A DNA stretch of 63,842 nt, the filler included, from Octopus bimaculoides (Eukaryota), in NCBI RefSeq assembly GCF_001194135.2. It is 5 parts of 5 records of this genome, joined end to end, with 100 filler letters (N's around TTAATTAATTAA, not from the genome) between each part and the next. Parts side by side here need not be neighbours in the genome. Positions count along the whole stretch, not along the records: positions 29,679 to 46,740 come from NC_068997.1; 4 more parts are not named here. The stretch is one strand, 5' to 3'. Below are positions 29,790 to 46,849 of the stretch, piece after piece. Within the stretch, counting starts at the first letter, position 1. Each line of letters starts with the position of its first letter. Position numbers and translations under genes: made by a program. The notes beneath the pieces are model-generated. The model did no database searches and had not been told where the DNA came from. It was given only the letters and a program-made list of their open reading frames with translations.

Positions 29790-30378
29790 ATATTAGAGGG
29801 GTTGTTATATTAATTAATGATCTTCTGTGAACAAGCGACGCATAAATTTTGCTGCAACTCTTTTCATTAGCAATTCCTCGCTCAAAAATCGTTGGCAGGA
29901 CCAGCAGGACATACCATTCATATCAACAAGTTCGTCCATTGTTCACTGAGGGTCCTCCAAGATCAGTTCATGAATTTCCATGATGTTTTCATTCCTTCGT
30001 GACGTCGACGGTCGCCCTGAATGTGGTTTGTGTTCAAGCGACAAGGAACAGTTCCTAATATGAGAACCACACGTAAACTTGTGTTTTGCTCATGGCAGCG
30101 TCCTTGTAATGTTTGAAGCATAGTGTCTGTTTCGGCTGCCGTTTTCCTCAGCAGAAAATAGAATTTCACGGAAGTACGTTGCTCCTTCGTCTCAGACATT
30201 GCAAAAATCGACAAACAGTGGAGAAGCACTGTAAAACAAAGACACACTACGTGGCAGTACGACTTCGCCCAACAACGCCATTCGATAGCCTGATGTCTGA
30301 GGGTTGTATTAAGTGGACTCCAGCGGTGGAAGCCTGAACTATAACCATGAACGTTTCCGGTTACTTTTGGGTACATAT
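29790..30378 (-). mobile_element. mariner transposon, 5' portion (N-terminal HTH region), frameshifted
   Basis: MSETKEQRTSVKFYFLLRKTAAETDTML resembles a mariner N-terminus. Downstream frame-shifted AAKFMRRL resembles the K(F/W)VPxxL linker. Confidence 0.8.
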
Positions 30379-31695
30379 AGAAACGTATCTGTGTATGTGT
30401 ATTTGAGTGTGTTTTTTGCTTGTGTGTGTGTGTGTGTGTTTAAATGAGTGTAGGCATAGTTATGGTAACCGTCACAAATGTAAGTAGAGATATTTATAAC
30501 ACTTAACTCTTCCTTTCTTATTGTTTTTTTTTTTTTGTCTTTTACATTTTCACAGAGAGAATCTTTCCTAGCAGTGACAGAATGCGGAGGGGAGCACTTT
30601 ACACCAGGCGACAGAATACATTTGGCGACATAAAGTTAAAAGCCGTCGCTCTTGTCGGCAGCCTTTTCGACTGTGCTGTCAGGTGTATGTTATCTCCGGA
30701 ATGTGTGGGGTTCGGATATGAATTATTCTGCCAAATGGCTGTGAAGTATTGAAGTTCAACAGAATTTCTTAAAACCCTTTCGTCACACAGACGAACACAC
30801 ACACACCTCACACACATACACACTGAAAAAAAGCTTGTTGAAAGACCTACAGAAAACTGTAAACCCTTCTAGTTATTTCGAAAGATATAATAGTTGTCCA
30901 TGTTTCATAATGGAAATATTAGGTTGTTTCACATGAAATGTCGTATTTGAAAGATAACAATAAAATGTTTCAGAAATTGTTAGAGATCTGATTTATTTAA
31001 TCAAAGTATGATCCATTGTCATTTATGACGTTTACCCAACGTTTCTCTATGTCATATATTCCATCTTTAAAAAAATTCATCTTTTGCTGTGATAAACTGT
31101 TCGAATGCTTCAATTACCTTTTCTTTATTTAAGAATGTTGTATTGCTTATGAAAAGCTCAAAATGCTTAAATAAGTGATGATCAGTAGGAGATATATTAA
31201 AATCCCAATATTCGTCACTGCTAGCATCATCCCCAAAAAATGCTCATCATTATTGCTGTCGTGCCCATCATGAACAGAGCTGTGCAGATAAGAAAAAGAG
31301 TCAGTTATCTTCCTAGATGTTAAGTAATCTATTATTACCTCCCCTTCCACTGTGGTTTATTTAATGTACAGCAGTAAGTATTTATAGCTGGTCAGGTACA
31401 CGTACATAAACATTATGCCCCAAAGAAGTACAACTGCTATGTACCAAGTCATAATTTTAGAATTTACTAAGACGATGGTATACGAAAAATAAAAATCGCC
31501 CCCATTGGCGCAGGAGTGGCTGTGTGGTAAGTAGCTTGCTTACGTACCACATGGTTCTGGGTTCAGTCCCACTGCGTAGCACCTTGGGCAGGTGTCTTCT
31601 ACTATAGCCTTGGGCCAACCAAAGCCTTGTGAGTGGATTTGGTAGACGGAAACTGAAAGAAGCCCGTCGTATATATGTATATATATATTCAATTA

Positions 31696-35521: not shown

Positions 35522-36552
35522 NNNNNNNNNNNNNNNNNNNNNNNNNNNNNNNNNNNNNNNNNNNNNNNNNNNNNNNNNNNNNNNNNNNNNNNNNNNNNNN
35601 NNNNNNNNNNNNNNNNNNNNNNNNNNNNNNNNNNNNNNNNNNNNNNNNNNNNNNNNNNNNNNNNNNNNNNNNNNNNNNNNNNNNNNNNNNNNNNNNNNNN
35701 NNNNNNNNNNNNNNNNNNNNNNNNNNNNNNNNNNNNNNNNNNNNNNNNNNNNNNNNNNNNNNNNNNNNNNNNNNNNNNNNNNNNNNNNNNNNNNNNNNNN
35801 NNNNNNNNNNNNNNNNNNNNNNNNNNNNNNNNNNNNNNNNNNNNNNNNNNNNNNNNNNNNNNNNNNNNNNNNNNNNNNNNNNNNNNNNNNNNNNNNNNNN
35901 NNNNNNNNNNNNNNNNNNNNNNNNNNNNNNNNNNNNNNNNNNNNNNNNNNNNNNNNNNNNNNNNNNNNNNNNNNNNNNNNNNNNNNNNNNNNNNNNNNNN
36001 NNNNNNNNNNNNNNNNNNNNNNNNNNNNNNNNNNNNNNNNNNNNNNNNNNNNNNNNNNNNNNNNNNNNNNNNNNNNNNNNNNNNNNNNNNNNNNNNNNNN
36101 NNNNNNNNNNNNNNNNNNNNNNNNNNNNNNNNNNNNNNNNNNNNNNNNNNNNNNNNNNNNNNNNNNNNNNNNNNNNNNNNNNNNNNNNNNNNNNNNNNNN
36201 NNNNNNNNNNNNNNNNNNNNNNNNNNNNNNNNNNNNNNNNNNNNNNNNNNNNNNNNNNNNNNNNNNNNNNNNNNNNNNNNNNNNNNNNNNNNNNNNNNNN
36301 NNNNNNNNNNNNNNNNNNNNNNNNNNNNNNNNNNNNNNNNNNNNNNNNNNNNNNNNNNNNNNNNNNNNNNNNNNNNNNNNNNNNNNNNNNNNNNNNNNNN
36401 NNNNNNNNNNNNNNNNNNNNNNNNNNNNNNNNNNNNNNNNNNNNNNNNNNNNNNNNNNNNNNNNNNNNNNNNNNNNATATATATAAACGCATATATATTT
36501 GATCGTGTGATATATGGAGATGAGAGAGAGCAGGTCGAGGGAGAGAATTATA

Positions 36553-36586
36553 TATAAACTGGATTCTTGTCGGGATCACGTCATTC
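36553..36586 (+). promoter_or_regulatory. TATA box plus Initiator core promoter
   Basis: TATAAA at 36553-36558 and TCATTC (TCAKTY Inr) at 36581-36586. The Inr A at 36583 is exactly 30 nt downstream of the TATA T, and an ATG follows 15 nt later. Confidence 0.65.
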
Positions 36587-36597
36587 TTAGTCGTGAA

Positions 36598-36643
36598 ATG
36601 GAACCAACGATGAATATGAAGATACATTTTGTATTATATTTTA
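36598..36643 (+). CDS. Secreted PAN/Apple-domain protein, exon 1 (signal peptide N-half)
   Basis: MEPTMNMKIHFVLYF plus 1 nt, then the strong donor GTAAGT (phase 1). Confidence 0.65.
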
Positions 36644-37380
36644 GTAAGTTCACTTTTATTGTTATTGCATAATATTGCTGTTGTTGTTGTTTATATCTAT
36701 ATCAGATTTGACCCATCTGTCATACAATCAAAACCAAATCTCAAGTGCGCATCCAATCTTGTTTTTTCAGACACACTAAAACTAATCTACATTAATCAAA
36801 TGAAATTTTTCTTTCTAAATCTTTAATCTGTTTGGCAAGAATTTTGATCTGAACCAGTGTCAAACATTTAAGAAGAAATTGGTTTAACGAAAAATGATTT
36901 TGTAGATTATTTCGAAAAAGAAAAGTGAGGTGAACTATAGACAAGCAACAACCGTTGTTTTTTTCATTTTATAGATTTTATCACTCAAGACTCTTCCCAG
37001 TGTTTTATTATTTTTGGAATATAGGGAATCATAAATGCTAGCGACACTGGTAGTATGGCGCAGTTTGGAATGATGCTTGAAACTGGTGGGCTTCCAAGAT
37101 GATGCCATGGAATTCGTCAATTCAGAAGGTCGTAAGAAATTGGTGTAACTAAATATTAAAACGAAATCGACATTGCCAGTCTGGTAGTCGGTGTTGTATA
37201 CGAATATTCCATCAGTGGATATTAAAGATGTGAAATTGCAAAATAGAAAATAGGAGAAAATACTATGCAACTAGAAGTATATTAGTTGTTTTCTTCCAAT
37301 TCTTGTGACAGTAGTTTGTCATTTTAGGGAAATGCGGCTGATATTTTTGATGACAGATTAAAAGCTTTTTTAACTCTTTC

Positions 37381-37427
<47 letters not shown>

Positions 37428-37435
37428 TACACATA

Positions 37436-38165
37436 CAGGGTGCGATAAGTAAGTTGTCGCAATTTTATATTTTTGATTTAGCGCATGTGCATTGTTTATT
37501 CTTTATTTTGTCGACTACAAAGTATAGTAGGGTCAGTTTGGCACCGTCTGTGAGAAAATGAGCACTATGACGCAATTCACTCTGCCAGAAATTTGGAAAC
37601 GACATTCTGAACTGCTTGGCATTCGCATCGGAAGCTCCAATACGAACGTTTCAGAGTGTCTGAGGACAGTGCAGAAAATTCAGAAAGAGTTGGATGAGTC
37701 TAATGGTGATTAGGAAGGTAGGGCAGCTCAGAAAACTCACTCTGATCGTTCTGATAAGAAAAGAACTACTCCTGAATTTGTTGGTGAGATCCATGATTGA
37801 CAACGATCCCTCCAAGTCAATCAGGTCTATCACCAGCGACATGAGAGTGTCTGAGTTTCTCATGGGGCAAGTAGTGCATGAAGACATTCAATATTCCTCA
37901 TACAAGATGAGAAAGGGCTAATTTTTATCCCAAGCCATCAAGGACAAGAGGAAAGGCCACGCTACGAAGCTTTTGAACAAGTTCAAGCATCCCGCGCAAC
38001 CGAACATGCTTTGGTTTTTCTTAGACGAGAAAAGGTTTTTACAGGATCAGGTGGAGAACACACAGAACTACCGTTGACTTTCCATGTCCCCAAAACATGT
38101 ACCGAGAGTGATAAAAGTCAAACATCCAGTAAGCACCATGGTGTTTGGAGGGATCGCTAGCTTGT
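37436..38165 (+). mobile_element. Tc1/mariner-superfamily transposon (maT/DD37D-like), truncated, in intron 1
   Basis: TA|CAGGGTG terminus; MIDNDPSKSIRSI...VVHEDIQYSSYKMRKG...LWFFLDEK...KHPVSTMVFG. The third catalytic residue is not present, so the subfamily is inferred. Confidence 0.75.
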
Positions 38166-38422
38166 TTGATTAGGTGGCTTCCATAGGGTTGTGTGGTTCC
38201 AAACTTTGATTCACAAATATGTTGTCTAGTTCGAGCCAGCTGTTTGACATTTTATACATGTTAATTATTCAACAGCCTCAAGTGAAAGAAACCCTTCCAA
38301 TGAACTTTAGTTAGATGAAATCTATATGCAAATCTGTCAGGTGATTAATTCATTTTTCGTGGAGGCAAGACATACACTGTCAACTGGTTTATTTTCACCA
38401 ATTGGCCCTTTCATTCTTTTAG

Positions 38423-38455
38423 CAGTGTTCCCTTTGTTGCAAGCATTTTGGGCAG
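38423..38455 (+). CDS. Secreted PAN/Apple-domain protein, exon 2 (signal peptide C-half)
   Basis: Polypyrimidine tract TTCATTCTTTTAG acceptor; 33 nt, phase 1-1, (T)VFPLLQAFWA(G); donor GTTTGC. Confidence 0.6.
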
Positions 38456-38794
38456 GTTTGCAAAATGAAAAAAACATCGCTTTTTCTGACCAAACGTTTC
38501 AGACGCGCCAAGAAGATGATAGACGCTGTCTTTCCTCGCCCTATTGAAGTATTAAATTGTAAACTGAGAAAAAATAAATAAATAAGCAATATCGGAATTT
38601 ATAAGTTTTTTCTTTTCTAATTCCAGCATTATGTTTTTTCTTGGCACGTGGACAAGGTATGTAAAATATATATTAACCTGTTTTTCTTTCTACAAATAAC
38701 TAGTTACGTAATTGAATGTGTGTTTGTGTGTCTGCACGCACGCACGCGCGTTTATCTGTCTGTCTTATGGTGTTTTCAAAGGAGGAGACAGCAT

Positions 38795-39470
38795 AGCTGA
38801 TATGAGACACCAGGTGTCACAGTACTGAGCAAGGGTGAACCACCAACAATTATGAAGGAGGAGGTTATGTGCTGCAAAGCTCATCCTGTGTGAGCAGCAA
38901 GTGCAGCACTGTCGGCAAAGAGGAGATCTTGGATCATTTGTTCCAGGGTGCTCATATGGGCATGTAGTCATCGGAGATTAAACAGACTCTCATCAAATGG
39001 TATCTGACATAGACTTCGCCCTCGTCCGCAAAATCTGTGGCCTGCATGCACATCATACTGAAGAAGCCGGTGAAGAGAGCTGGTGCCATAACGCAAACCT
39101 GCTTCACTCCGTTGCTGATCGGGAAGTTACTGAATCTGATTTCCCAACGCTGGTTTTCATACAACTGGCTGACCATTTTCAGGACCTTTGTGGTACAGAC
39201 GAGTCTCTCAACGATATGCTGCAATCTCTTCCAACTCGCTGAGTTGAATCCTTTAGTCAGGTCAATGAGTATTAGATACCACCCTTTGCTTTGCTTCCAG
39301 CAATTCTCTTGTACCTGCCCGGAAACAAACACCATGTCTGTGATGATCTCGTTGAATCTGAAGACGCACTGGCTCTCGGAAGTTGTTCTTCCGTGTCTGT
39401 TCAGCAAAACCCTTTCAGGAACAATACATATATAAAAAGAACAAAAGAGAATTGAAGTGGGAAGTGCCAT
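38795..39470 (-). mobile_element. RTE (BovB-like) LINE RT fragment
   Basis: ESQCVFR...TDMVFV...IDLTKGF...FPISNGVKQVCVMAPALF resembles RTE RT domains 2-4. Confidence 0.85.
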
Positions 39471-39520
39471 CAGGGTAAGGATTTGTAGATGACACGTCGC
39501 TTCTTAAATCACACGATGTT

Positions 39521-39572
<52 letters not shown>

Positions 39573-39818
39573 CCAAGCTTGTTTCACTTTCCGGGTATAA
39601 AACCCATTCATGTATTCGGTTGGCCCGAGGTTATAGTAGAAGTGCTAGCAGTGGAACTGAACCTTCAGGCATGTCGTTCGGAATCAAATTTCTCTCCACA
39701 CATCCACACCTGCATTTAACTAAAAATAACAATAACAACATTAGTCGCTGAGCGTATAATACCATGCAAAATGCTTCATTCGAAATCAAACCAAATATTT
39801 CGTGTATGCTTTCATATA

Positions 39819-40104
39819 CTGTAATCCCTCGCCATATCGAGGTTCACCTATCGCGGCTCACTTATCGCAATTCACTTATCACGGTTCACTTATCGCGATT
39901 CAACTATAGCGCTTCAACTATCGCGGTTTATCATTTAAGCTTGCGTCGGTTCATTCGTGGTGGTGTTTTGCATTTATAATAAAATAAATATATACAAATT
40001 CTAAAAATGATTAAAATATATACAGCATTGTTTCTACTTCATGGATTTTTAGCTAACGCGGCGGGTTTTGGAATGTATCACTCGCGATATTCGAGGGATT
40101 ACTG
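39819..40104. mobile_element. Tigger/pogo-like MITE
   Basis: TIRs C(T/A)GTAATCCCTCG and CGAGGGATTACTG, TA TSD at 39817-18 and 40105-06, internal ~14-bp TTCACTTATCGCGG-type tandem repeats. Confidence 0.8.
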
Positions 40105-40127
40105 TAGATTAAATCAGAGAAATACTA

Positions 40128-40277
40128 TACGTCTGGAAAAAAGATAATTTACTATTTCAAGTTTAATTATTGAATTTCTGCAGCTTTACGTACTCTTCAG
40201 CTACGTGTATTCAATGTTTCATACAATCATATTTTAAATAAAGGATTCGAGTCATATTATTATCGAAGTAAATTTAT
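40128..40277 (+). pseudogene. Truncated duplicate of the intron 2/exon 3 junction (pseudo-exon)
   Basis: Aligns with ~41340-41489 (AAAGATAA...TTTCAAGTTTAATTATTGAATTTCT...TAAAGGA..GAGTCATATTATTATCGAAGTAAATTTAT). Reads GFESYYYRSKFIK, then runs into an L1 fragment and a stop. Confidence 0.75.
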
Positions 40278-41330
40278 CAAGAGCTTTAGAATGATCTAAA
40301 TTGATCAGGGCTCCACCCGTGCTAGCTTCTTTAGCCAGTTTCTCAAGTTGTTGTGGGTGGATCTTTTCGGGATGGCACATGTCTGTGCATCCCCAACCAG
40401 ATCCCCGACGACAAGCACCAACCTCATAGCTAACATCTTGGCCATAGTTTGAACTCTGCATTAAGCAGAATTATGAGCCTAACGTTGTCGATACAAAACT
40501 TCAAGTTCGGGTCATTTCTCAGCAACGCTACTAATGTTAGCTATCAGGTTTATAAATACTCCAGCGGGGTGACAATACTGTTTATATATATATATAAAGG
40601 AAAGCTTCTCGTTGGGCTTCTGGTAAGGTTTATAAAAGGGGGGGGGGAGTCTAGGTAACGATAAGATCGTGGATTTAATTCCACGCCATGCCTCTGCCAC
40701 TTGGGCCTATTGCACGGCGTTTGTCCCTTCTTGTCTAAGTGCTCGTGCCCCAGCTCTGACAACGCAACCTTCGTTGAAGAATTGGCCGAGTGCAAATCCG
40801 CTGCATGCACGTCTATCGGCATGCCTTTTCTAACAGTCTCGTCTTTTTTTCTTGACTATCTGTCTCTACTCTGTTTCATTCTATTGCTAGTCCTTTACTA
40901 AACCTTATCGATTCTATTCTAATCGGCCTTTTCTAGGCGAACCACTATTTATTGTTGATTATTTTCCCCGACAACACCCTCTTAACTAGTTAACTAATCC
41001 GATAACTGAAATCTTTATGCACCAGAAACGACGTGTTCAGGTTCTAGTAACCGGGTCTCTGTCTATGAAACCTATATAAGACGTCTGTATCTCGCTGTGT
41101 GCACGTCGATCGAGATGCCTTTTTAAAATTCTCATCTAACTTCTTCACTATCTGTCTCTACTCTATTTATTTCTAATGCTAGGCTTCTTCCTCGGTGTGG
41201 AATCGAATGTCCACCATTCCATTGGCCCTGCTTCTCTGTATTTTTTCCTTTAGATTAGACAGAACCTAAAGCTTTTTGTATTTGAGCCTCTCTGGCTCTT
41301 TCCACCCACCTTGATTTTAAACCGATTGTA
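40278..41330 (-). mobile_element. L1/Tx1-clade LINE fragments (EN-RT linker and RT N-terminus)
   Basis: VALLRNDP, ILLNAEFK, LVVGDLVGDAQTCAIP and GALINLDHSKALD. The segment at ~40805-40885 is duplicated at ~41100-41180. Confidence 0.65.
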
Positions 41331-41455
41331 CAGTTCGTCACTGTTTGTGAAAAAGATAACTTATTATTTCAAGTTTAATTATTGAATTTCTATCTTAACA
41401 GTATTTTTTCAGCTTTATGTATTGTATGTTTCATTCAATTATATTTCTTATAAAG

Positions 41456-41713
41456 GAGATGAGTCATATTATTATCGAAGTAAATTTATTAAAGTTACCA
41501 ATGCTACAATTGATGGAAATTTCTTGCTGAAGATGCCTGCGAACGATAGCGAAAATTGTGCAGAAATATGTCACAGAGACGATATGTGTAATTCATTCGT
41601 ATTAAACCACGTAGAAGAGTGGTGTGAACTTTATCGCGAGACGACAAGAGCACATAGATTACTGATAAACTCAAATACTGACTACTATGAGCTCAGACAT
41701 ATAAGTAAAGGCG
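41456..41713 (+). CDS. Secreted PAN/Apple-domain protein, exon 3 (canonical PAN domain)
   Basis: CAEICHRDDMCNSFVLNHVEEWCELY...TDYYE = C-x3-C-x5-C-x-SF...C-x-L...YYE PAN signature. Acceptor ATAAAG, donor GTAAAT; 258 nt, phase 1-1. Confidence 0.9.
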
Positions 41714-41735
41714 GTAAATATACTACTACTACTAC

Positions 41736-41796
<61 letters not shown>

Positions 41797-42208
41797 NNNN
41801 NNNNNNNNNNNNNNNNNNNNNNNNNNNNNNNNNNNNNNNNNNNNNNNNNNNNNNNNNNNNNNNNNNNNNNNNNNNNNNNNNNNNNNNNNNNNNNNNNNNN
41901 NNNNNNNNNNNNNNNNNNNNNNNNNNNNNNNNNNNNNNNNNNNNNNNNNNNNNNNNNNNNNNNNNNNNNNNNNNNNNNNNNNNNNNNNNNNNNNNNNNNN
42001 NNNNNNNNNNNNNNNNNNNNNNNNNNNNNNNNNNNNNNNNNNNNNNNNNNNNNNNNNNNNNNNNNNNNNNNNNNNNNNNNNNNNNNNNNNNNNNNNNNNN
42101 NNNNNNNNNNNNNNNNNNNNNNNNNNNNNNNNNNNNNNNNNNNNNNNNNNNNNNNNNNNNNNNNNNNNNNNNNNNNNNNNNNNNNNNNNNNNNNNNNNNN
42201 NNNNNNNN

Positions 42209-42270
<62 letters not shown>

Positions 42271-42272
<2 letters not shown>

Positions 42273-42690
42273 GCCCGGATGCAGTACCAGGCAGTGACTC
42301 TCATGGTTTCTGATCTTAATTGATTGGAAGTGTTATCATGTACATTGTTTTATCTTGGTATGAAAAGATGGGCTACAGCAAATATTCTGCTTAATACCAC
42401 AGATTTGCTTGCCAGTTGTTTGACCTTAACCAGTTAAGCATGTCACTTGGTGGCTGACGATAAGTACATCTCTGATCATGAGTAGAAGTAGTGGGGGAGC
42501 ATCATAGCCATGTGTTGAGAGGAATTCTTTGGGGTTTGGATAATTCACCTTTGGAAACATGGGTGTTTTGCTCAACATCCTTAAACAAACCTTATTCAGA
42601 GACCTTTTGAGCGGGATGGGCTACTCGACCTGAAGAAGATTCTAACTGGGCCCCACCTGCGAGGTCATGTGCTGCGAGGTCATGCTAATC
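42271..42690. repeat. (TAA)n-adjacent interspersed repeat, non-coding
   Basis: Higher-GC block abutting a (TAA)n array, with no ORF. It resembles a common octopus repeat from recollection only and is single-copy in this window. Confidence 0.3.
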
Positions 42691-42976
42691 TTGTTCTGTT
42701 TTCTGCCTATCCGGCTGAATTGATGACTCCTGATTGTCGGCCAAATGGCATATAAGAGAACCGAATTTAAGTGATACCAATTGTTTTATATATTGTTATC
42801 TTCAAGATAAGAATTACATAATTTTTATGACGGTGAGGTGAGTCAGACATCTTGAAACATTTAGAAATATGGTTGTTTGTGATAAAGTTTAGCAACATAC
42901 CATCTTTGTTACAATACTTTACAGTAACTTACTGTTCTCATTTAACTAACAGTCATATTTTTTATTACATTTATAG

Positions 42977-43204
42977 AGTGTCCAGTCAGTGTCATTTATG
43001 GAGCCAAGTTCCAGGAACATGCATATCCAGCTAAACAGGGGGAATCATTCTTTGACATTCTAAAGCATTGCTATCAATCGAATTGGTGTAAGGCTTTCAG
43101 CTACAACTCCAAATCAGCCGTATACTACCTGAGTAATTATACATCTCACAATGCCACTGTTATCGTGATCAAAAATGATTGGCAACACATTGAATTCATA
43201 AAAT
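42977..43204 (+). CDS. Secreted PAN/Apple-domain protein, exon 4 (Cys-reduced PAN-like domain)
   Basis: Acceptor TTACATTTATAG, donor GTAAGT; 228 nt, phase 1-1, stop-free. (E)CPVSVIYGAKFQEHAY...HCYQSNWCKAFSYNSKSAVYYLS...DWQHIEFIK. Confidence 0.8.
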
Positions 43205-43563
43205 GTAAGTTGGTATTTGTTTACCTCGTCTTCTGTGATATATTGAGTATACTACATAGCATTCTGCAGAAAATAATTCGACATTATATGTATAGCTGTT
43301 TGATTGGGGTTTCACTTCACAGTAACTGGGAAACGCCTCTGACAAGTGTGTTCAACTACAGACTTTGGTCTTCCAATGGGTTGCGAGTGAAACTGTAATC
43401 TAGAAAACACTTCCTACAGAATGCTTTCGTGTATATGCAGATATGTATATGTACATATGTATGTATTCTTTTATTCCTTCACTTGGTTCAGTCATTTTGA
43501 CTGTGGCCATGCTAGAGCACCGCCTTTTAGTCGAAGAAATCGACCCCTGCACTTATATGTATT

Positions 43564-43594
<31 letters not shown>

Positions 43595-44034
43595 NNNNNN
43601 NNNNNNNNNNNNNNNNNNNNNNNNNNNNNNNNNNNNNNNNNNNNNNNNNNNNNNNNNNNNNNNNNNNNNNNNNNNNNNNNNNNNNNNNNNNNNNNNNNNN
43701 NNNNNNNNNNNNNNNNNNNNNNNNNNNNNNNNNNNNNNNNNNNNNNNNNNNNNNNNNNNNNNNNNNNNNNNNNNNNNNNNNNNNNNNNNNNNNNNNNNNN
43801 NNNNNNNNNNNNNNNNNNNNNNNNNNNNNNNNNNNNNNNNNNNNNNNNNNNNNNNNNNNNNNNNNNNNNNNNNNNNNNNNNNNNNNNNNNNNNNNNNNNN
43901 NNNNNNNNNNNNNNNNNNNNNNNNNNNNNNNNNNNNGAATAGAAATCCCAGGTAAATTCTCGTGTATAACATGTAAATCTAACAATCGTTTTGTAGACTT
44001 TTAAGAAATTCAGAGTATTTAGCAACGACAAATA

Positions 44035-44170
44035 ATCTTTTCTGGTCTAGGCTCAAGGCTCGAAATTTTTGGTAGGTGGGGGCCTGTCGATTAATTCGAC
44101 CCCAGTACGCAACTGGTACTTAAGTTTTTGACCCCCGAAAGAATGAAAGGCAAAGTCGACCTCGGCGGAA
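44035..44170 (-). mobile_element. SINE family B 3' part
   Basis: TCGACCCCAGTACGCAACTGGTACT...CCCCGAAAGAATGAAAGGCAAAGTCGACCTCGGCGGAA. Confidence 0.8.
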
Positions 44171-44830
44171 CAACGACAGATAATATGTGCGAAGAAAATC
44201 ATAATCTTTATTTTAGATTACACCTTAAAAATCTAGCAATTGTTGCAATTGCATTCACATATACGTACGCACAGAAACACACACACACACACTCACATAT
44301 GTATAAACACAAACACACACAAGCATGCATACGCATACACACACATATGTATATACGTATAAGCAATATTATTAAAATTAATAATATCTTCGAAAATATA
44401 TGCCGGCACAGCATTATTAAGATAATACAAATTGGTGAAATTTCAACTGAACATCTGAAAACATTTTAGCTGCAAATAAACGCTAACAAAAAGAAAAGCC
44501 AAAATCAAATCTAACTTAAGACATTCATTCAGCAACCAGCAACATCATTGAATAAGTGATTTACTTTATAAAAATAAAAGATAAAAAATACCATACTAAT
44601 TCTATGTTCTTTGACTGTTTGAAATCTACATAGGAAAATAATCTAAAAAAAATAATCTCATAAAGACAATAACTATAAACAGAAAATACATTGACTGAAT
44701 CCAGTAACTCAACGAATTAATCTAAATTCATCGGTGTAAAAGAATACATATGAAGATATATGGTTTGTATACATACAAATATTTGTGTAACGATATCAGT
44801 AAATATATGTATTTCGTGTTTTTCTTTTAG

Positions 44831-44923
44831 CCTTCAAGTTCGAAATGAAGTATAATCTAGATGATATTCAGTCACCTAGTGGCTGCACTTTGAGAAATTT
44901 ACGTACGGTTTACTTTAAAAACG
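44831..44923 (+). CDS. Secreted PAN/Apple-domain protein, exon 5 (linker with one Cys)
   Basis: Strong acceptor TTTTTCTTTTAG, donor GTAAAT; 93 nt, phase 1-1. (S)FKFEMKYNLDDIQSPSGCTLRNLRTVYFKN. Confidence 0.7.
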
Positions 44924-45478
44924 GTAAATAATATATTTATTTCCACAACGGTTACCATATTTTATATATTCATTTTGCATTGAATATTTGTTTATTTATT
45001 TTATAACGCAATATCAAAAGTGCTTGGTTTAATGATTAAGGTGTTGCAATCACAATCGTAAGATCCTTGTTTCGATATCCAGAGGTGAGGTGCAATGTGT
45101 TCTTGAATATATAAAAAAAAAAACACTTTATTTTACAATACTCCATTTCACTCTCGTGTAATAATTATGCTACAGCAACAGCTTGAAATCTAACGGTGCG
45201 AGGTAACAACTTTCCATCAGTGGGGATATGTTGTAATTTCAGTCTTTTATAGGGTTTGGAAACTTTTATAGGGTTTGGAGTTTGTCTGTAACGCTTAAAA
45301 TGAGTTTTACATTTTACGTATATTTATATGTTATTCAGCTGAAAGTATAGAATTAATTATTTACTAATCCATAAACATATTCATACGCACATAAATACGC
45401 CTACACACAAATTCATATACCATCAAAGATACAAAAATATTATAGAATGTTAACTTCCTTTTCTTTTCATATTCACAG

Positions 45479-45675
45479 AGTTAAACAAAAATGGTGGGAT
45501 ACAGGCCACAAGATACACAAGAAGATTAGACACAAACACCTTTACAAAATTGTTAAAGAGACCAGACGATCGAATCCATAGCAGAATTTCCTGTGCCGCT
45601 TCTTGTGATTTAACTTCAGAATGTATTGGCTTCACATATATAAATAACAAGTGTGCTTTTAAAACTTTTTATTGA
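45479..45675 (+). CDS. Secreted PAN/Apple-domain protein, terminal exon 6 (short apple-like module)
   Basis: Acceptor TTTCATATTCACAG, phase 1. ...HSRISCAASCDLTSECIGFTYINNKCAFKTFY* (C-x3-C-x5-C-x-GF-x-Y...C); TGA at 45673-45675. Possible AATAAA at 46136. Confidence 0.85.
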
Positions 45676-46221
45676 AATCCAAGAGACTTATTCAAAATAT
45701 TGTGTGTAGCCAAGTGACGTTGTCATCAATCTTTTGCATCTTAGGTGCGGGCAGAAATCTAAAGCTACGTCCCTTCACACAATCGTTTCCTTCTTATATA
45801 CGCTACTGAAATGTAATTCTTTAAAGCATACTTGTAATATTTTACTACTTTTTCCTAGCCATAACTGAAAATTTTCTGTTTCGTTTCAACACATCCTGCA
45901 TAGCAGTGAACATACTTTATCGGTATACTACTCAGAACATACTCAACATCCCAACACATAAATTTCAAATTTTAAATTTTGACATATATACTTTTATTCC
46001 TTTATTCTTTTACTTGATCTAGTCATTTGACTGCGGCCATGCTGTAGCACTGCCTTGTAATAATATAAATTATTTACAGGTTTTTTTTTCAGTTACGAAA
46101 CAATTTGTCGTGATACTAGAATTGTCTTATTGTTAAATAAAATTTCATCAAACTATTTCGCTGTCATTTACGACTTTATACACTCCTTATCGTTTTCTCT
46201 CGTATAGTACTATATATTCTA

Positions 46222-46670
46222 CAGGGTGGCCATAAAGTCATGCACCAACCTGCAATATGTGAAATTGCTAACATTCTCATCTTCATCTCTTTTCACAACT
46301 ACCGACATTACTCACAAACCAGTCCTCATTGGATGGAAGCAGATAATCAACAAGGCCGGAGCAAGGTACTGGTTTGGTGTGGGATTTGGCATAATCAGGT
46401 AATTCAACCATTCTATTTTGAGTGTTCTGTGACAGGTGGCTGGCAACAAGATGATGGAGGATCTTGGCAACAAAATGATGCTTAGCAACAAGATGATGCT
46501 TGATAGCAAAATGATGCAGGATGGGGATCTGCCCCATTATGCATTAGAGCTTCATAATTTTCTGATTGAACATTTTCTAGGGAGGTGGGTCGAGTGTCGC
46601 GTGGCAATTGAATGGGCACCACGGTCACCAGGCTTAGCTCCCATGGACTTTTCTTCTGGGGTTACATTAG
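46222..46670 (+). mobile_element. Tc1/mariner-superfamily DD41D (rosa-type) transposon remnant
   Basis: TA|CAGGGTGGCC terminus; KVLVWCGIW; QDG...PHY...WAPRSPGLAPMDF with 41 residues between the second and third Asp. Confidence 0.75.
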
Positions 46671-46849
46671 AACGATATATATATGTATATATATATACAT
46701 ATACACAGACATACGAACGATATATATATATATATATATANNNNNNNNNNNNNNNNNNNNNNNNNNNNNNNNNNNNNNNNNNNNTTAATTAATTAANNNN
46801 NNNNNNNNNNNNNNNNNNNNNNNNNNNNNNNNNNNNNNNNATACAATTG

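What the first reader, a model, noticed from the sequence alone, without database searches (positions are those of the whole stretch)
36553..45675. Hidden six-exon gene for a small secreted triple PAN/Apple protein
Joining the exons gives 855 nt = 284 aa plus stop, with every intron GT-AG and phase 1. The product is a signal peptide (MNMKIHFVLYFTVFPLLQAFWAG), a PAN domain, a Cys-reduced PAN-like domain, a linker and a short apple module. It has four N-glycosylation sequons (NAT, NDS, NYT, NAT), 12 Cys and no enzymatic, lectin or TM domain. The ORF track shows only exon 3. PAN/Apple modules mediate protein or glycan binding (established). A PAN-only secreted protein under a TATA promoter suggests a tissue-specific gland, mucus or immune product (inference). 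Extra exons could be hidden in the gaps at 41797-42208 and 43595-43935.
Basis: partly seen in the sequence, partly recalled or inferred. Interest (0 to 1): 0.75.

Follow-up and report, generated by a model that had tools for sequence, protein, structure and literature searches.

The report
Annotated octopus secreted PAN/apple protein gene

Summary
The gene is real. It has six exons, every intron is GT-AG and phase 1, and both assembly gaps lie inside introns. It is not hidden. Its product is UniProt A0A0L8HWA4 ("Apple domain-containing protein", Octopus bimaculoides), 100 % identical over the shared 279 residues. The same CDS end is called in assembly GCA_001194135.2.

- Exon 2 is 38627-38656 (…TLCFFLARGQ…), not 38423-38455.
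- The CDS is 840 nt / 279 aa, not 855 / 284.
- No exon hides in the gaps. The gap-free O. sinensis orthologue and a tandem paralogue have the same six exons with uninterrupted junctions.

The PAN assignment holds. Pfam PAN_1 gives E 9e-13. The AlphaFold2 model matches factor XI/prekallikrein apple domains, MIC4 and the HGF N domain. Module 2 has lost one disulfide pair that its relatives keep.

The gene sits in a same-strand tandem array of an octopod family (Octopus, Argonauta). Against O. sinensis, exons are less conserved than introns: exon 3 is 76-80 % identical, its flanking intron 93-95 %. dN/dS is 1.55, and module-1 non-synonymous divergence is 2.6 times the non-coding rate (p 1.6e-9).

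The most likely role is a secreted, glycosylated, non-enzymatic binding protein with a fast-evolving recognition surface. Tissue and ligand are unknown. No paper in the searchable library mentions it.

The parts
36551..36558 (+). TATATAAA box, 52 nt upstream of the ATG at 36610
   Evidence: It sits in a block (TATATATAAACTGGATTCT) that is invariant in the O. sinensis orthologue and the O. bimaculoides paralogue, while sequence further upstream diverges. TSS use was not tested.
36610..36643 (+). Exon 1 (CDS part): MNMKIHFVLYF + 1 nt; donor GTAAGT. Further in-frame ATGs lie at 36598 (MEPT…), 36520 and 36514 (the annotated N-terminal extension).
   Evidence: The paralogue has no in-frame ATG upstream of MNMK. 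The 30-32 aa extension in the database models spans the TATA box, so it is probably an over-extension (inference).
38423..38455 (+).
   Evidence: It is absent from all four database proteins. Its donor is weak (CAG|GTTTGC). It is conserved with its splice sites in O. sinensis. In the paralogue the GT at the position of the donor is lost and the nearest GT lies 4 nt upstream, which would break the frame. Occasional alternative use cannot be excluded without RNA reads.
38627..38656 (+). Exon 2 as annotated (30 nt, phase 1-1): …T LCFFLARGQ G…, the second half of the signal peptide
   Evidence: tblastn with A0A0L8HWA4. Acceptor ttccag, donor GTATGT. Homologous exons exist in the O. sinensis orthologue and in the paralogue, the latter with an in-frame 3-nt indel.
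41456..41713 (+). Exon 3 (258 nt, phase 1-1): PAN module 1, residues 23-109; Cys56, 60, 66, 78; sequons N37 and N51
   Evidence: Pfam PAN_1 E 2.8e-9, 37.1 bits against a cut-off of 21.4. AF2 pLDDT about 80-89 over most of the module. It is the fastest-evolving part: dN 0.278, dS 0.151, and 76-80 % nt identity against 93-95 % in the flanking intron.
41797..42208 (.). Assembly gap 1, inside intron 3, flanked on both sides by (AAT)n
   Evidence: The same gap is present in GCA_001194135.2. The O. sinensis intron 3 is gap-free and has no PAN-like hit.
42977..43204 (+). Exon 4 (228 nt, phase 1-1): PAN/apple module 2, residues 109-185; Cys109, 139, 145; sequons N161 and N166
   Evidence: Pfam PAN_1 is sub-threshold when the module is scanned alone (E 0.033). 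AF2 pLDDT is about 70-84. Profile hits to MIC4 and SML-2 apple domains. Relatives carry two more Cys, at the positions of I135 and Y158.
43595..43936 (.). Assembly gap 2, inside intron 4, after a (TA)n run
   Evidence: The orthologous O. sinensis intron is 11 kb. Its extra sequence holds a reverse-transcriptase-like ORF and long microsatellite runs, with no PAN-like hit.
44831..44923 (+). Exon 5 (93 nt, phase 1-1): residues 185-216, with the conserved Cys202. Probably the C-terminal closure of module 2.
   Evidence: Cys202 is conserved in most family members. The model has pLDDT below 50 here, so the pairing with Cys109 is inferred.
45479..45675 (+). Exon 6 (197 nt including TGA): short PAN-like module 3, residues 216-279; Cys253, 257, 263, 273
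   Evidence: It has the same C-x3-C-x5-C-x9-C motif as module 1. Pfam PAN_1/PAN_4 are sub-threshold (E 0.03-0.04). AF2 pLDDT is 50-59. The stop coincides with the end of the CDS called in GCA_001194135.2.
46136..46141 (+). AATAAA, the only canonical poly(A) signal in the 1 kb after the stop (a 3' UTR of about 460 nt if it is used)
   Evidence: Pattern search; use not tested.
30555..30752 (+). Last exon of the neighbouring upstream family member (…FDCAVRCMLSPECVGFGYELFCQMAVKY*)
   Evidence: tblastn gives 60-64 % identity to the C-termini of A0A0L8HWE5 (P0017) and P0022. Pfam PAN_1 E 0.005. It shows that the gene lies in a same-strand tandem array.

Best explanation
Window 36551-46141 (+) holds the already annotated Octopus bimaculoides gene for A0A0L8HWA4. 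It has six exons.

The protein is 279 aa. A signal peptide is probably cut after Gly20 or Gly22. The mature protein is about 30 kDa, has pI about 8.4 and carries up to four N-glycans. It is built only of PAN/apple modules:
- Module 1 (exon 3) is a four-Cys PAN domain.
- Module 2 (exons 4 and 5) is an apple-type domain. It has lost its second-to-fifth Cys pair and keeps the inner pair and, probably, the first-to-last pair Cys109-Cys202.
- Module 3 (exon 6) is a C-terminally short four-Cys PAN-like domain.

The gene is one member of a same-strand tandem array of an octopod family of such three-module proteins. This family is related to giant octopus proteins that combine many PAN repeats with Sushi repeats. 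Each of modules 1 and 2 is carried mainly by one symmetric phase 1-1 exon, the arrangement that permits duplication and skipping of modules without loss of frame.

Proposed mode of action (inferred): the protein is secreted and acts without catalysis, by binding a protein or glycan partner through its PAN surfaces. Module 1 is the variable recognition surface, because its amino-acid sequence has changed faster than neutral DNA since the split from O. sinensis.

Shown: gene structure, orthology, domain family and rate pattern.
Inferred: secretion, glycosylation, disulfide pairing and the binding role.
Unknown: tissue and ligand.
For: Gene model:
- Exon coordinates, GT-AG borders and phases.
- 100 % identity and coverage to A0A0L8HWA4 with the annotated exon 2.
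- The same six phase-1 exons occur in the O. sinensis orthologue (L001, gap-free, collinear) and in paralogue LOC106868215 (L002).

Domains:
- PAN_1 scores 48.3 bits against a cut-off of 21.4, in three stretches.
- The PDB profile search hits the PAN domains of a fungal copper oxidase, MIC4 and SML-2.
- The AF2 model built on 15 octopus sequences has pLDDT of about 80-89 (module 1) and 70-84 (module 2).
- Its best Foldseek matches are factor XI and prekallikrein apple domains (E 2e-7, about 275 columns), MIC4, SML-2, the HGF N domain and plasminogen PAN.

Secretion:
- The only strongly hydrophobic stretch is N-terminal.
- Pfam finds no other domain.

Family and array:
-.
- The giant relatives show 14-21 PAN_1 stretches plus Sushi repeats.

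Rates against O. sinensis:
- dN 0.165, dS 0.106, dN/dS 1.55. For module 1, dN is 0.278.
- The non-synonymous proportion is 0.232 in module 1 against 0.090 for 7,602 aligned non-coding sites of the same locus (Fisher p 1.6e-9). For the whole CDS it is 0.148 (p 2.8e-6).
- Identity drops exactly at the exon borders.
- All 12 mature Cys, all splice sites and the frame are kept in both species.
Against: - No expression or junction data could be consulted, so transcription, the choice of exon 2, the start codon and the tissue are unverified.
- SignalP was not available. The signal peptide rests on hydrophobicity and the -3/-1 rule.
- The overall dN/dS above 1 is not significant on its own (binomial p 0.08).
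- The stronger test uses aligned non-coding DNA as the neutral yardstick. That yardstick may be biased towards conserved segments.
- Only two species were compared, so relaxed constraint plus chance is not fully excluded for modules 2 and 3, whose rates are close to neutral.
- Module 3 and residues 183-240 are poorly modelled (pLDDT below 60 and below 50).
- Modules 2 and 3 are below the Pfam threshold when scanned alone.
- The database models start 30-32 codons further upstream. If that start is real, it would put a charged extension in front of the hydrophobic segment.
Confidence: 0.8

Rival explanations
1. The reader's transcript is right, or is an alternative form: exon 1 splices to 38423-38455 (VFPLLQAFWA) instead of, or in addition to, 38627-38656. 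Both candidates are phase 1-1 and hydrophobic. Either one, or both together, would still give a signal peptide and the same mature protein.
For: - Both have AG acceptors and GT donors and keep the frame.
- Its hydrophobicity is similar to that of the annotated exon.
Against: - It is used in none of the four database proteins from two species and two loci.
- In the paralogue the GT at the position of the donor is lost; the nearest GT lies 4 nt upstream and would break the frame. The annotated exon differs there only by an in-frame 3-nt indel.
- Its donor CAG|GTTTGC departs from the consensus at three positions, against one for AAG|GTATGT.
- The surrounding intron is just as conserved, so its conservation carries no information.
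Confidence: 0.1
2. The gene is a decaying or functionally relaxed duplicate. The high amino-acid divergence reflects lost constraint in a redundant tandem family, not selection for change.
For: - dN/dS is close to 1 for modules 2 and 3 (0.93 and 1.17).
- The overall excess is not significant by the synonymous-site test (p 0.08).
- One disulfide pair of module 2 has been lost.
- Several O. sinensis family members are fragments or chimeric models.
Against: - After a neutral divergence of about 0.10 per site, the frame, all ten splice sites, the stop, all 12 mature Cys and three of the four sequons are kept in both species (N51 is replaced in O. sinensis).
- Module 1 changes 2.6 times faster than non-coding DNA, which neutrality cannot produce.
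- The two lost Cys are the two presumed partners, a coherent change shared by both species and therefore older than their split.
Confidence: 0.12
3. The elevated divergence of exon 3 comes from gene conversion by a paralogous exon in one lineage, not from point substitutions under selection.
For: - Tandem paralogues with homologous exons lie within 10-20 kb.
- dS of exon 3 (0.151) is somewhat above the non-coding rate of 0.096.
Against: - The identity drop begins and ends at the exon borders, and the flanking intron stays at 93-95 %.
- Exon 3 of either species is no closer to the known paralogue. Protein identity to the paralogue is 56 % for this gene and 53 % for the O. sinensis orthologue, with dS of 0.43-0.50.
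- The excess lies in non-synonymous changes, not synonymous ones.
Confidence: 0.05
4. The longer database form (309/311 aa, starting at 36520 or 36514) is the true product. A 30-32 residue charged N-terminal extension then makes the hydrophobic segment an internal signal-anchor rather than a cleaved signal peptide.
For: - The upstream frame is open in both O. bimaculoides and O. sinensis.
- Both sets of annotators chose this start.
Against: - The extension contains the TATA box that is conserved in all three genes.
- The homologous stretch of the paralogue has stops and no ATG, and its protein starts at MNMK.
- Other family members start directly with a short signal peptide.
Confidence: 0.1

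Closest known systems
UniProt A0A0L8HWA4_OCTBM 'Apple domain-containing protein' (isoform model A0A0L8HWC3) and the 311-aa product called at CM046617.1:48.90 Mb in GCA_001194135.2
   Same: It is the same gene. It is 100 % identical over residues 31-309 and has the same exons 1-6 and the same stop.
   Different: The database models start 30-32 codons upstream, across the TATA box. A0A0L8HWC3 skips exon 3. No function or expression is attached to either entry.
Octopus sinensis LOC118766661 (orthologue), O. bimaculoides LOC106868215 (tandem paralogue) and the wider octopod family (LOC106868906, LOC106868212, Argonauta hians Ahia01_0012215/0008499)
   Same: The orthologue (LOC118766661) and the tandem paralogue (LOC106868215) share the six-exon phase-1 structure. 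The wider family shares the order signal peptide, PAN, apple-like module, short PAN. Several members lie on the same chromosome.
   Different: Identity is 71 % to the orthologue, 56 % to the paralogue and 24-32 % to the more distant family members aligned. Only this gene and its orthologue lack the second-to-fifth Cys pair of module 2.
Apple domains of coagulation factor XI and plasma prekallikrein (PDB 7QOX, 5EOK, 6O1G)
   Same: They are the best structural matches (Foldseek E 2e-7 to 1e-6). The alignment runs over about 275 columns, that is, several tandem modules. They act by non-catalytic protein binding (established knowledge).
   Different: Sequence identity is 12-15 %. There are three modules rather than four and no protease domain. 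None of the three modules keeps all six apple Cys. The relative placement of the modules is not comparable (rmsd 13-17 Å).
Stand-alone PAN/apple adhesins and binders: Toxoplasma MIC4, Sarcocystis SML-2 (galactose-binding), the HGF and plasminogen N domains (heparin/protein binding), and leech antiplatelet protein (a salivary PAN protein that binds collagen; cited from my own knowledge)
   Same: They are small secreted proteins or domains that consist of PAN modules and work by binding glycans or proteins. They appear in the structure and profile hits. HGF N domain matches have rmsd 2-3 Å over about 80-90 residues.
   Different: There is no detectable orthology and identity is only 13-22 %. Ligand-binding residues were not compared. 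The analogy is functional and was not tested.
Giant octopus multi-PAN + Sushi proteins (O. sinensis LOC118764742, 2643 aa; O. bimaculoides LOC106869390, 1730 aa)
   Same: They are the closest non-family sequence relatives (E 2e-77 and 6e-51). The module 1 + module 2 unit matches repeatedly within them.
   Different: They contain 14-21 PAN_1 stretches plus Sushi repeats. They are about ten times longer and lie on another chromosome. The short third module was not seen in the best-matching stretch.

Membership tests
PAN/apple superfamily (Pfam PF00024 PAN_1 and clan) | Match to the family HMM above the curated threshold | tested here: met
   The whole protein scores 48.3 bits against a cut-off of 21.4, E 9e-13, in three stretches. 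Module 1 alone scores 37.1 bits. Modules 2 and 3 alone score 14.5 and 14.2 bits, below the threshold.
PAN/apple superfamily (Pfam PF00024 PAN_1 and clan) | Core Cys motif C-x3-C-x5-C-x(9-12)-C, giving two nested disulfides | tested here: met
   Read from the sequence. Module 1: C56, C60, C66, C78. Module 3: C253, C257, C263, C273. Module 2 keeps only the inner pair, C139 and C145; the paralogue has all four. Disulfide bonding itself was not tested.
PAN/apple superfamily (Pfam PF00024 PAN_1 and clan) | PAN fold (a helix packed on an antiparallel sheet) recognisable by structure comparison | tested here: met
   In the AF2 model, modules 1 and 2 have pLDDT of about 70-89 and strand-strand-helix-strand-strand order. 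All 50 listed Foldseek PDB matches are PAN/apple-containing proteins. Module 3 is inconclusive (pLDDT 50-59).
Apple domain in the strict sense (factor XI / prekallikrein type) | About 90 residues with six Cys paired 1-6, 2-5 and 3-4 | tested here: not met
   Modules 1 and 3 have four Cys and no terminal pair. Module 2 plus exon 5 has C109, C139, C145 and C202, with the second and fifth Cys replaced by I135 and Y158. Paralogues have all six. The protein is therefore PAN-type overall and has one degenerate apple-type module.
Apple domain in the strict sense (factor XI / prekallikrein type) | Actual disulfide connectivity | not testable with these tools
   This needs mass spectrometry of the protein or an experimental structure. 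The model is unreliable at residues 183-240.
Octopod three-module secreted PAN family (tandem array on O. bimaculoides CM046617.1) | Shared six-exon, all-phase-1 gene structure and module order | tested here: met
   Exon maps of this gene, the O. sinensis orthologue and the paralogue. Family alignments.
Octopod three-module secreted PAN family (tandem array on O. bimaculoides CM046617.1) | Tandem, same-strand neighbours of the same family | tested here: met
   The upstream last exon lies at 30555-30752. Downstream lie LOC106868215 and a 249-aa PAN gene.
Classically secreted protein | Cleavable N-terminal signal peptide and no other membrane segment | tested here: inconclusive
   The hydrophobic core is at residues 5-17, and A18/G20 or G20/G22 occupy positions -3/-1. 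No later hydrophobic stretch reaches the usual Kyte-Doolittle transmembrane cut-off of about 1.6 over 19 residues; the highest value after residue 25 is 0.98. No signal-peptide predictor was available and the start codon is ambiguous.

The most novel reading that the evidence does not exclude
The gene belongs to an octopod-restricted, tandemly expanded family of small secreted PAN/apple proteins whose first module is under diversifying selection. That would make the family recognition or effector molecules acting on a fast-changing outside partner: microbes (a lectin-like immune factor), prey (a salivary or venom binder in the manner of the leech PAN protein that blocks collagen-platelet adhesion) or gametes. 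No paper in the searchable library describes the family.
Probability: 0.3. Interest if true: 0.5.

Novelty: already known. Interest (0 to 1): 0.25.

Why it matters
As stated, the finding adds nothing to the databases. The gene and its 'Apple domain-containing' label have been in public databases since the first O. bimaculoides genome annotation.

What may be worth a specialist's time is the context found here. An uncharacterised family of small PAN-only secreted proteins, so far seen only in octopods, is arrayed in tandem. Its exons have diverged faster than its introns. In other animals that pattern marks venom, immune and fertilisation proteins.

If a tissue panel showed gland-specific expression, the family would be a candidate for a new class of cephalopod secretory effectors.

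Tried and rejected
1. Closing the gaps with the chromosome-level O. bimaculoides assembly. L002 carries the same N runs at the same places, so it is the same sequence and gives no new information. The O. sinensis locus was used instead.
2. AlphaFold2 with a three-sequence alignment gave pLDDT 36.7 and was discarded. The 15-sequence run was used.
3. Profile-profile comparison of the three modules with each other. With three sequences per profile the probabilities were only 0.2-13 %. The alignments fell in the register of the Cys motif, but this is not evidence on its own.
4. Word-indexed homologue searches found only Octopus proteins. The exhaustive HMM search was needed to see Argonauta and the giant multi-PAN relatives.
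5. Five literature searches (apple/PAN domain with octopus or cephalopod terms; six accession numbers) found nothing on this gene or family.
6. The Pfam hit ORF158L-like (E 0.055, below threshold) was rejected as chance.
7. The bacterial promoter/terminator scan does not apply to a eukaryotic gene.
8. Mariner-like transposase remnants, suspected by eye in intron 1 (37540-38170) and downstream (46226-46700), gave no Pfam hit and remain unconfirmed.

Full report
**Source and identity.**
The piece is Octopus bimaculoides DNA. Window 38079-46740 is 100 % identical to CM046617.1 (GCA_001194135.2) 48,898,381 onward, N runs included. Exons 36610-36643, 38423-38455, 41456-41713, 42977-43204, 44831-44923 and 45479-45675 all have AG/GT borders and phase 1. 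They give an open frame of 843 nt (280 aa), not the stated 855 nt / 284 aa.

**The gene is not hidden.**
A search of 5.8 billion proteins returned four hits:
- A0A0L8HWA4_OCTBM, 'Apple domain-containing protein', 309 aa.
- A0A0L8HWC3, an isoform model that lacks exon 3.
- O. sinensis LOC118766661, 71 % identical.
- O. bimaculoides LOC106868215, 56 % identical.

tblastn places that peptide at 38627-38656, with acceptor ttccag and donor GTATGT. With this exon the CDS is 840 nt / 279 aa and matches A0A0L8HWA4 residues 31-309 exactly.

In the paralogue the GT at the position of its donor is lost; the nearest GT lies 4 nt upstream and would break the frame. The annotated exon differs there only by an in-frame 3-nt indel. 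I therefore take 38627-38656 as exon 2. Rare alternative use of 38423-38455 remains untested.

**The gaps.**
Both gaps are intronic. Gap 41797-42208 lies within an (AAT)n run in intron 3. Gap 43595-43936 follows a (TA)n run in intron 4. The orthologous O. sinensis locus (L001, 47 kb, no N) is collinear with the window on both sides of each gap.
- It has the same six exons.
- It has no PAN-like tblastn hit in introns 3 or 4.
- Its intron 4 is 11 kb. The extra DNA carries a reverse-transcriptase-like ORF and long microsatellite tracts.
- The orthologue and the paralogue read straight through the exon 3/4 and 4/5 junctions.

Nothing suggests a hidden exon. The true lengths of the gaps remain unknown.

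**Start and promoter.**
TATATAAA at 36551-36558 sits in a block that is invariant in the orthologue and the paralogue. The database proteins start at 36514 or 36520, upstream of this box. In the paralogue the homologous stretch has stops and no ATG, and its protein begins at MNMK. The likely start is therefore 36610, or the in-frame ATG at 36598. The mature protein is the same in either case.

**Protein.**
- Pfam PAN_1 scores 48.3 bits (cut-off 21.4) in three stretches.
- Scanned alone, module 1 is significant (E 2.8e-9) and modules 2 and 3 are sub-threshold (E 0.03-0.04).
- All three modules share C-x3-C-x5-C-x(9-12)-C, except that module 2 of this gene and of its orthologue lacks the outer two Cys, which every other relative keeps.
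- In those relatives the stretch from Cys109 to Cys202 holds six Cys over 94 residues. That is the apple pattern (pairs 1-6, 2-5 and 3-4; established knowledge). Exon 5 is therefore probably the closing part of module 2 rather than a linker (inference).
- An AlphaFold2 model from 15 octopus sequences has pLDDT of about 80-89 for module 1, 70-84 for module 2, 50-59 for module 3 and below 50 for residues 183-240.
- Its best PDB matches are factor XI and prekallikrein apple domains (E 2e-7, about 275 columns), MIC4, SML-2, the HGF N domain and plasminogen PAN. A sequence-profile search of the PDB agrees.
- The only strongly hydrophobic segment is N-terminal. The mature chain is about 30 kDa with pI 8.4.

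**Family and genomic setting.**
- An exhaustive HMM search of 1.84 billion representatives found 118 proteins at E ≤ 1e-3.
- Of the 22 best named hits I looked up, 20 are octopod (O. bimaculoides, O. sinensis, O. vulgaris, Argonauta hians). The other two are annelid multi-PAN proteins. Three further hits I looked up are unnamed metagenome sequences.
- The closest non-family relatives are giant octopus proteins with 14-21 PAN_1 stretches plus Sushi repeats.
- In the genome the gene is flanked, on the same strand, by the last exon of another family member at 30555-30752 and downstream by LOC106868215 and a 249-aa PAN gene.
- Exons 2-5 are all phase 1-1. This allows the exon-3-skipped model A0A0L8HWC3 to stay in frame.

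**Evolutionary rate.**
Against O. sinensis, Nei-Gojobori estimates are dN 0.165, dS 0.106 and dN/dS 1.55. The synonymous-deficit test gives p 0.08. For module 1, dN is 0.278 and dS 0.151.

The 7,602 aligned non-coding sites of the same locus differ at 9.0 %. Non-synonymous sites differ at 14.8 % overall (p 2.8e-6) and at 23.2 % in module 1 (p 1.6e-9). In 100-nt windows, identity falls from 93-95 % in the intron to 76-80 % inside exon 3, and from 93-94 % to 84-90 % inside exon 4.

The frame, splice sites, Cys and three of the four sequons are nevertheless kept. This pattern argues for selection for change on module 1 rather than decay. Caveats:
- Only two species were compared.
- The neutral yardstick is aligned DNA only.
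- Gene conversion is unlikely, because the drop stops at the exon borders, but it was not formally excluded.

**Interpretation.**
The best-supported account is a secreted, N-glycosylated, disulfide-stabilised protein that works by binding. Its first PAN module is a rapidly changing recognition surface. It is one of a lineage-restricted tandem family.

Comparable stand-alone PAN proteins bind galactose (SML-2, MIC4), heparin (HGF N domain), other proteins (factor XI apple domains) or collagen (leech antiplatelet protein; cited from my own knowledge). Which of these applies here, and in which tissue, cannot be decided here. Five literature searches found nothing on the gene or the family.

**Verdict.**
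The claim of a hidden gene is wrong. The domain reading is right. The functional guess is untested. Interest is low as a discovery, with a modest lead in the exon-faster-than-intron pattern.

Noticed in passing
window 40131-40280 versus 41343-41492: A 150-nt direct duplicate (83 % identical, 1,212 nt upstream) copies the end of intron 2 and the first 37 nt of exon 3. It keeps an AG acceptor and runs into a stop after 18 codons, so it is a decoy pseudo-exon. O. sinensis has only the true copy.
   Followed up: partly
window 30555-30752 (+): The terminal exon of a neighbouring family member ends …CMLSPECVGFGYELFCQMAVKY*. It is 60-64 % identical to the C-termini of A0A0L8HWE5 and an O. sinensis-type relative. 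The rest of that gene lies outside the piece.
   Followed up: partly
window 38952-39470 (-), in intron 2: A 172-aa ORF matches reverse transcriptase RVT_1 (E 2.9e-11). It is a retroelement fragment, and it is also present at the orthologous place in O. sinensis (92 % identity).
   Followed up: partly
window 37540-38170 (+) and 46226-46700 (+); also 29963-30376 (-): These stretches are broken by stops and frameshifts. By eye their translations resemble mariner/Tc1-type transposase remnants (for example …WAPRSPGLAPMDF…). Pfam gave no hit.
   Followed up: partly
window 42209-42674 (intron 3, just after gap 1): This segment has no counterpart in the O. sinensis intron. It is 88.6 % identical to a segment in intron 3 of the tandem paralogue (L002 17018-17470). 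It is a locally repeated element of unknown kind.
   Followed up: no
window 38380-38660 and L002 10640-10960: The last ~250 nt of intron 1 upstream of exon 2 aligns throughout between the two paralogues (window 38237-38730 is 76 % identical to L002 10512-10993). It was not determined whether this is a regulatory element or simply slow decay.
   Followed up: no
L001 19390-19395 (O. sinensis exon 3 acceptor): The orthologue has a tandem acceptor (aaag|aag|G). The annotated protein uses the upstream AG, which keeps the length equal to O. bimaculoides exon 3.
   Followed up: no
P0011 (298 aa; source species not looked up): This database protein is a chimeric prediction. It joins PAN modules of a neighbouring family member to the signal-peptide end and the start of module 1 of the orthologue LOC118766661. 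It ends with exon 6 of that orthologue read in a wrong frame (RVKQKWWDTG…).
   Followed up: no
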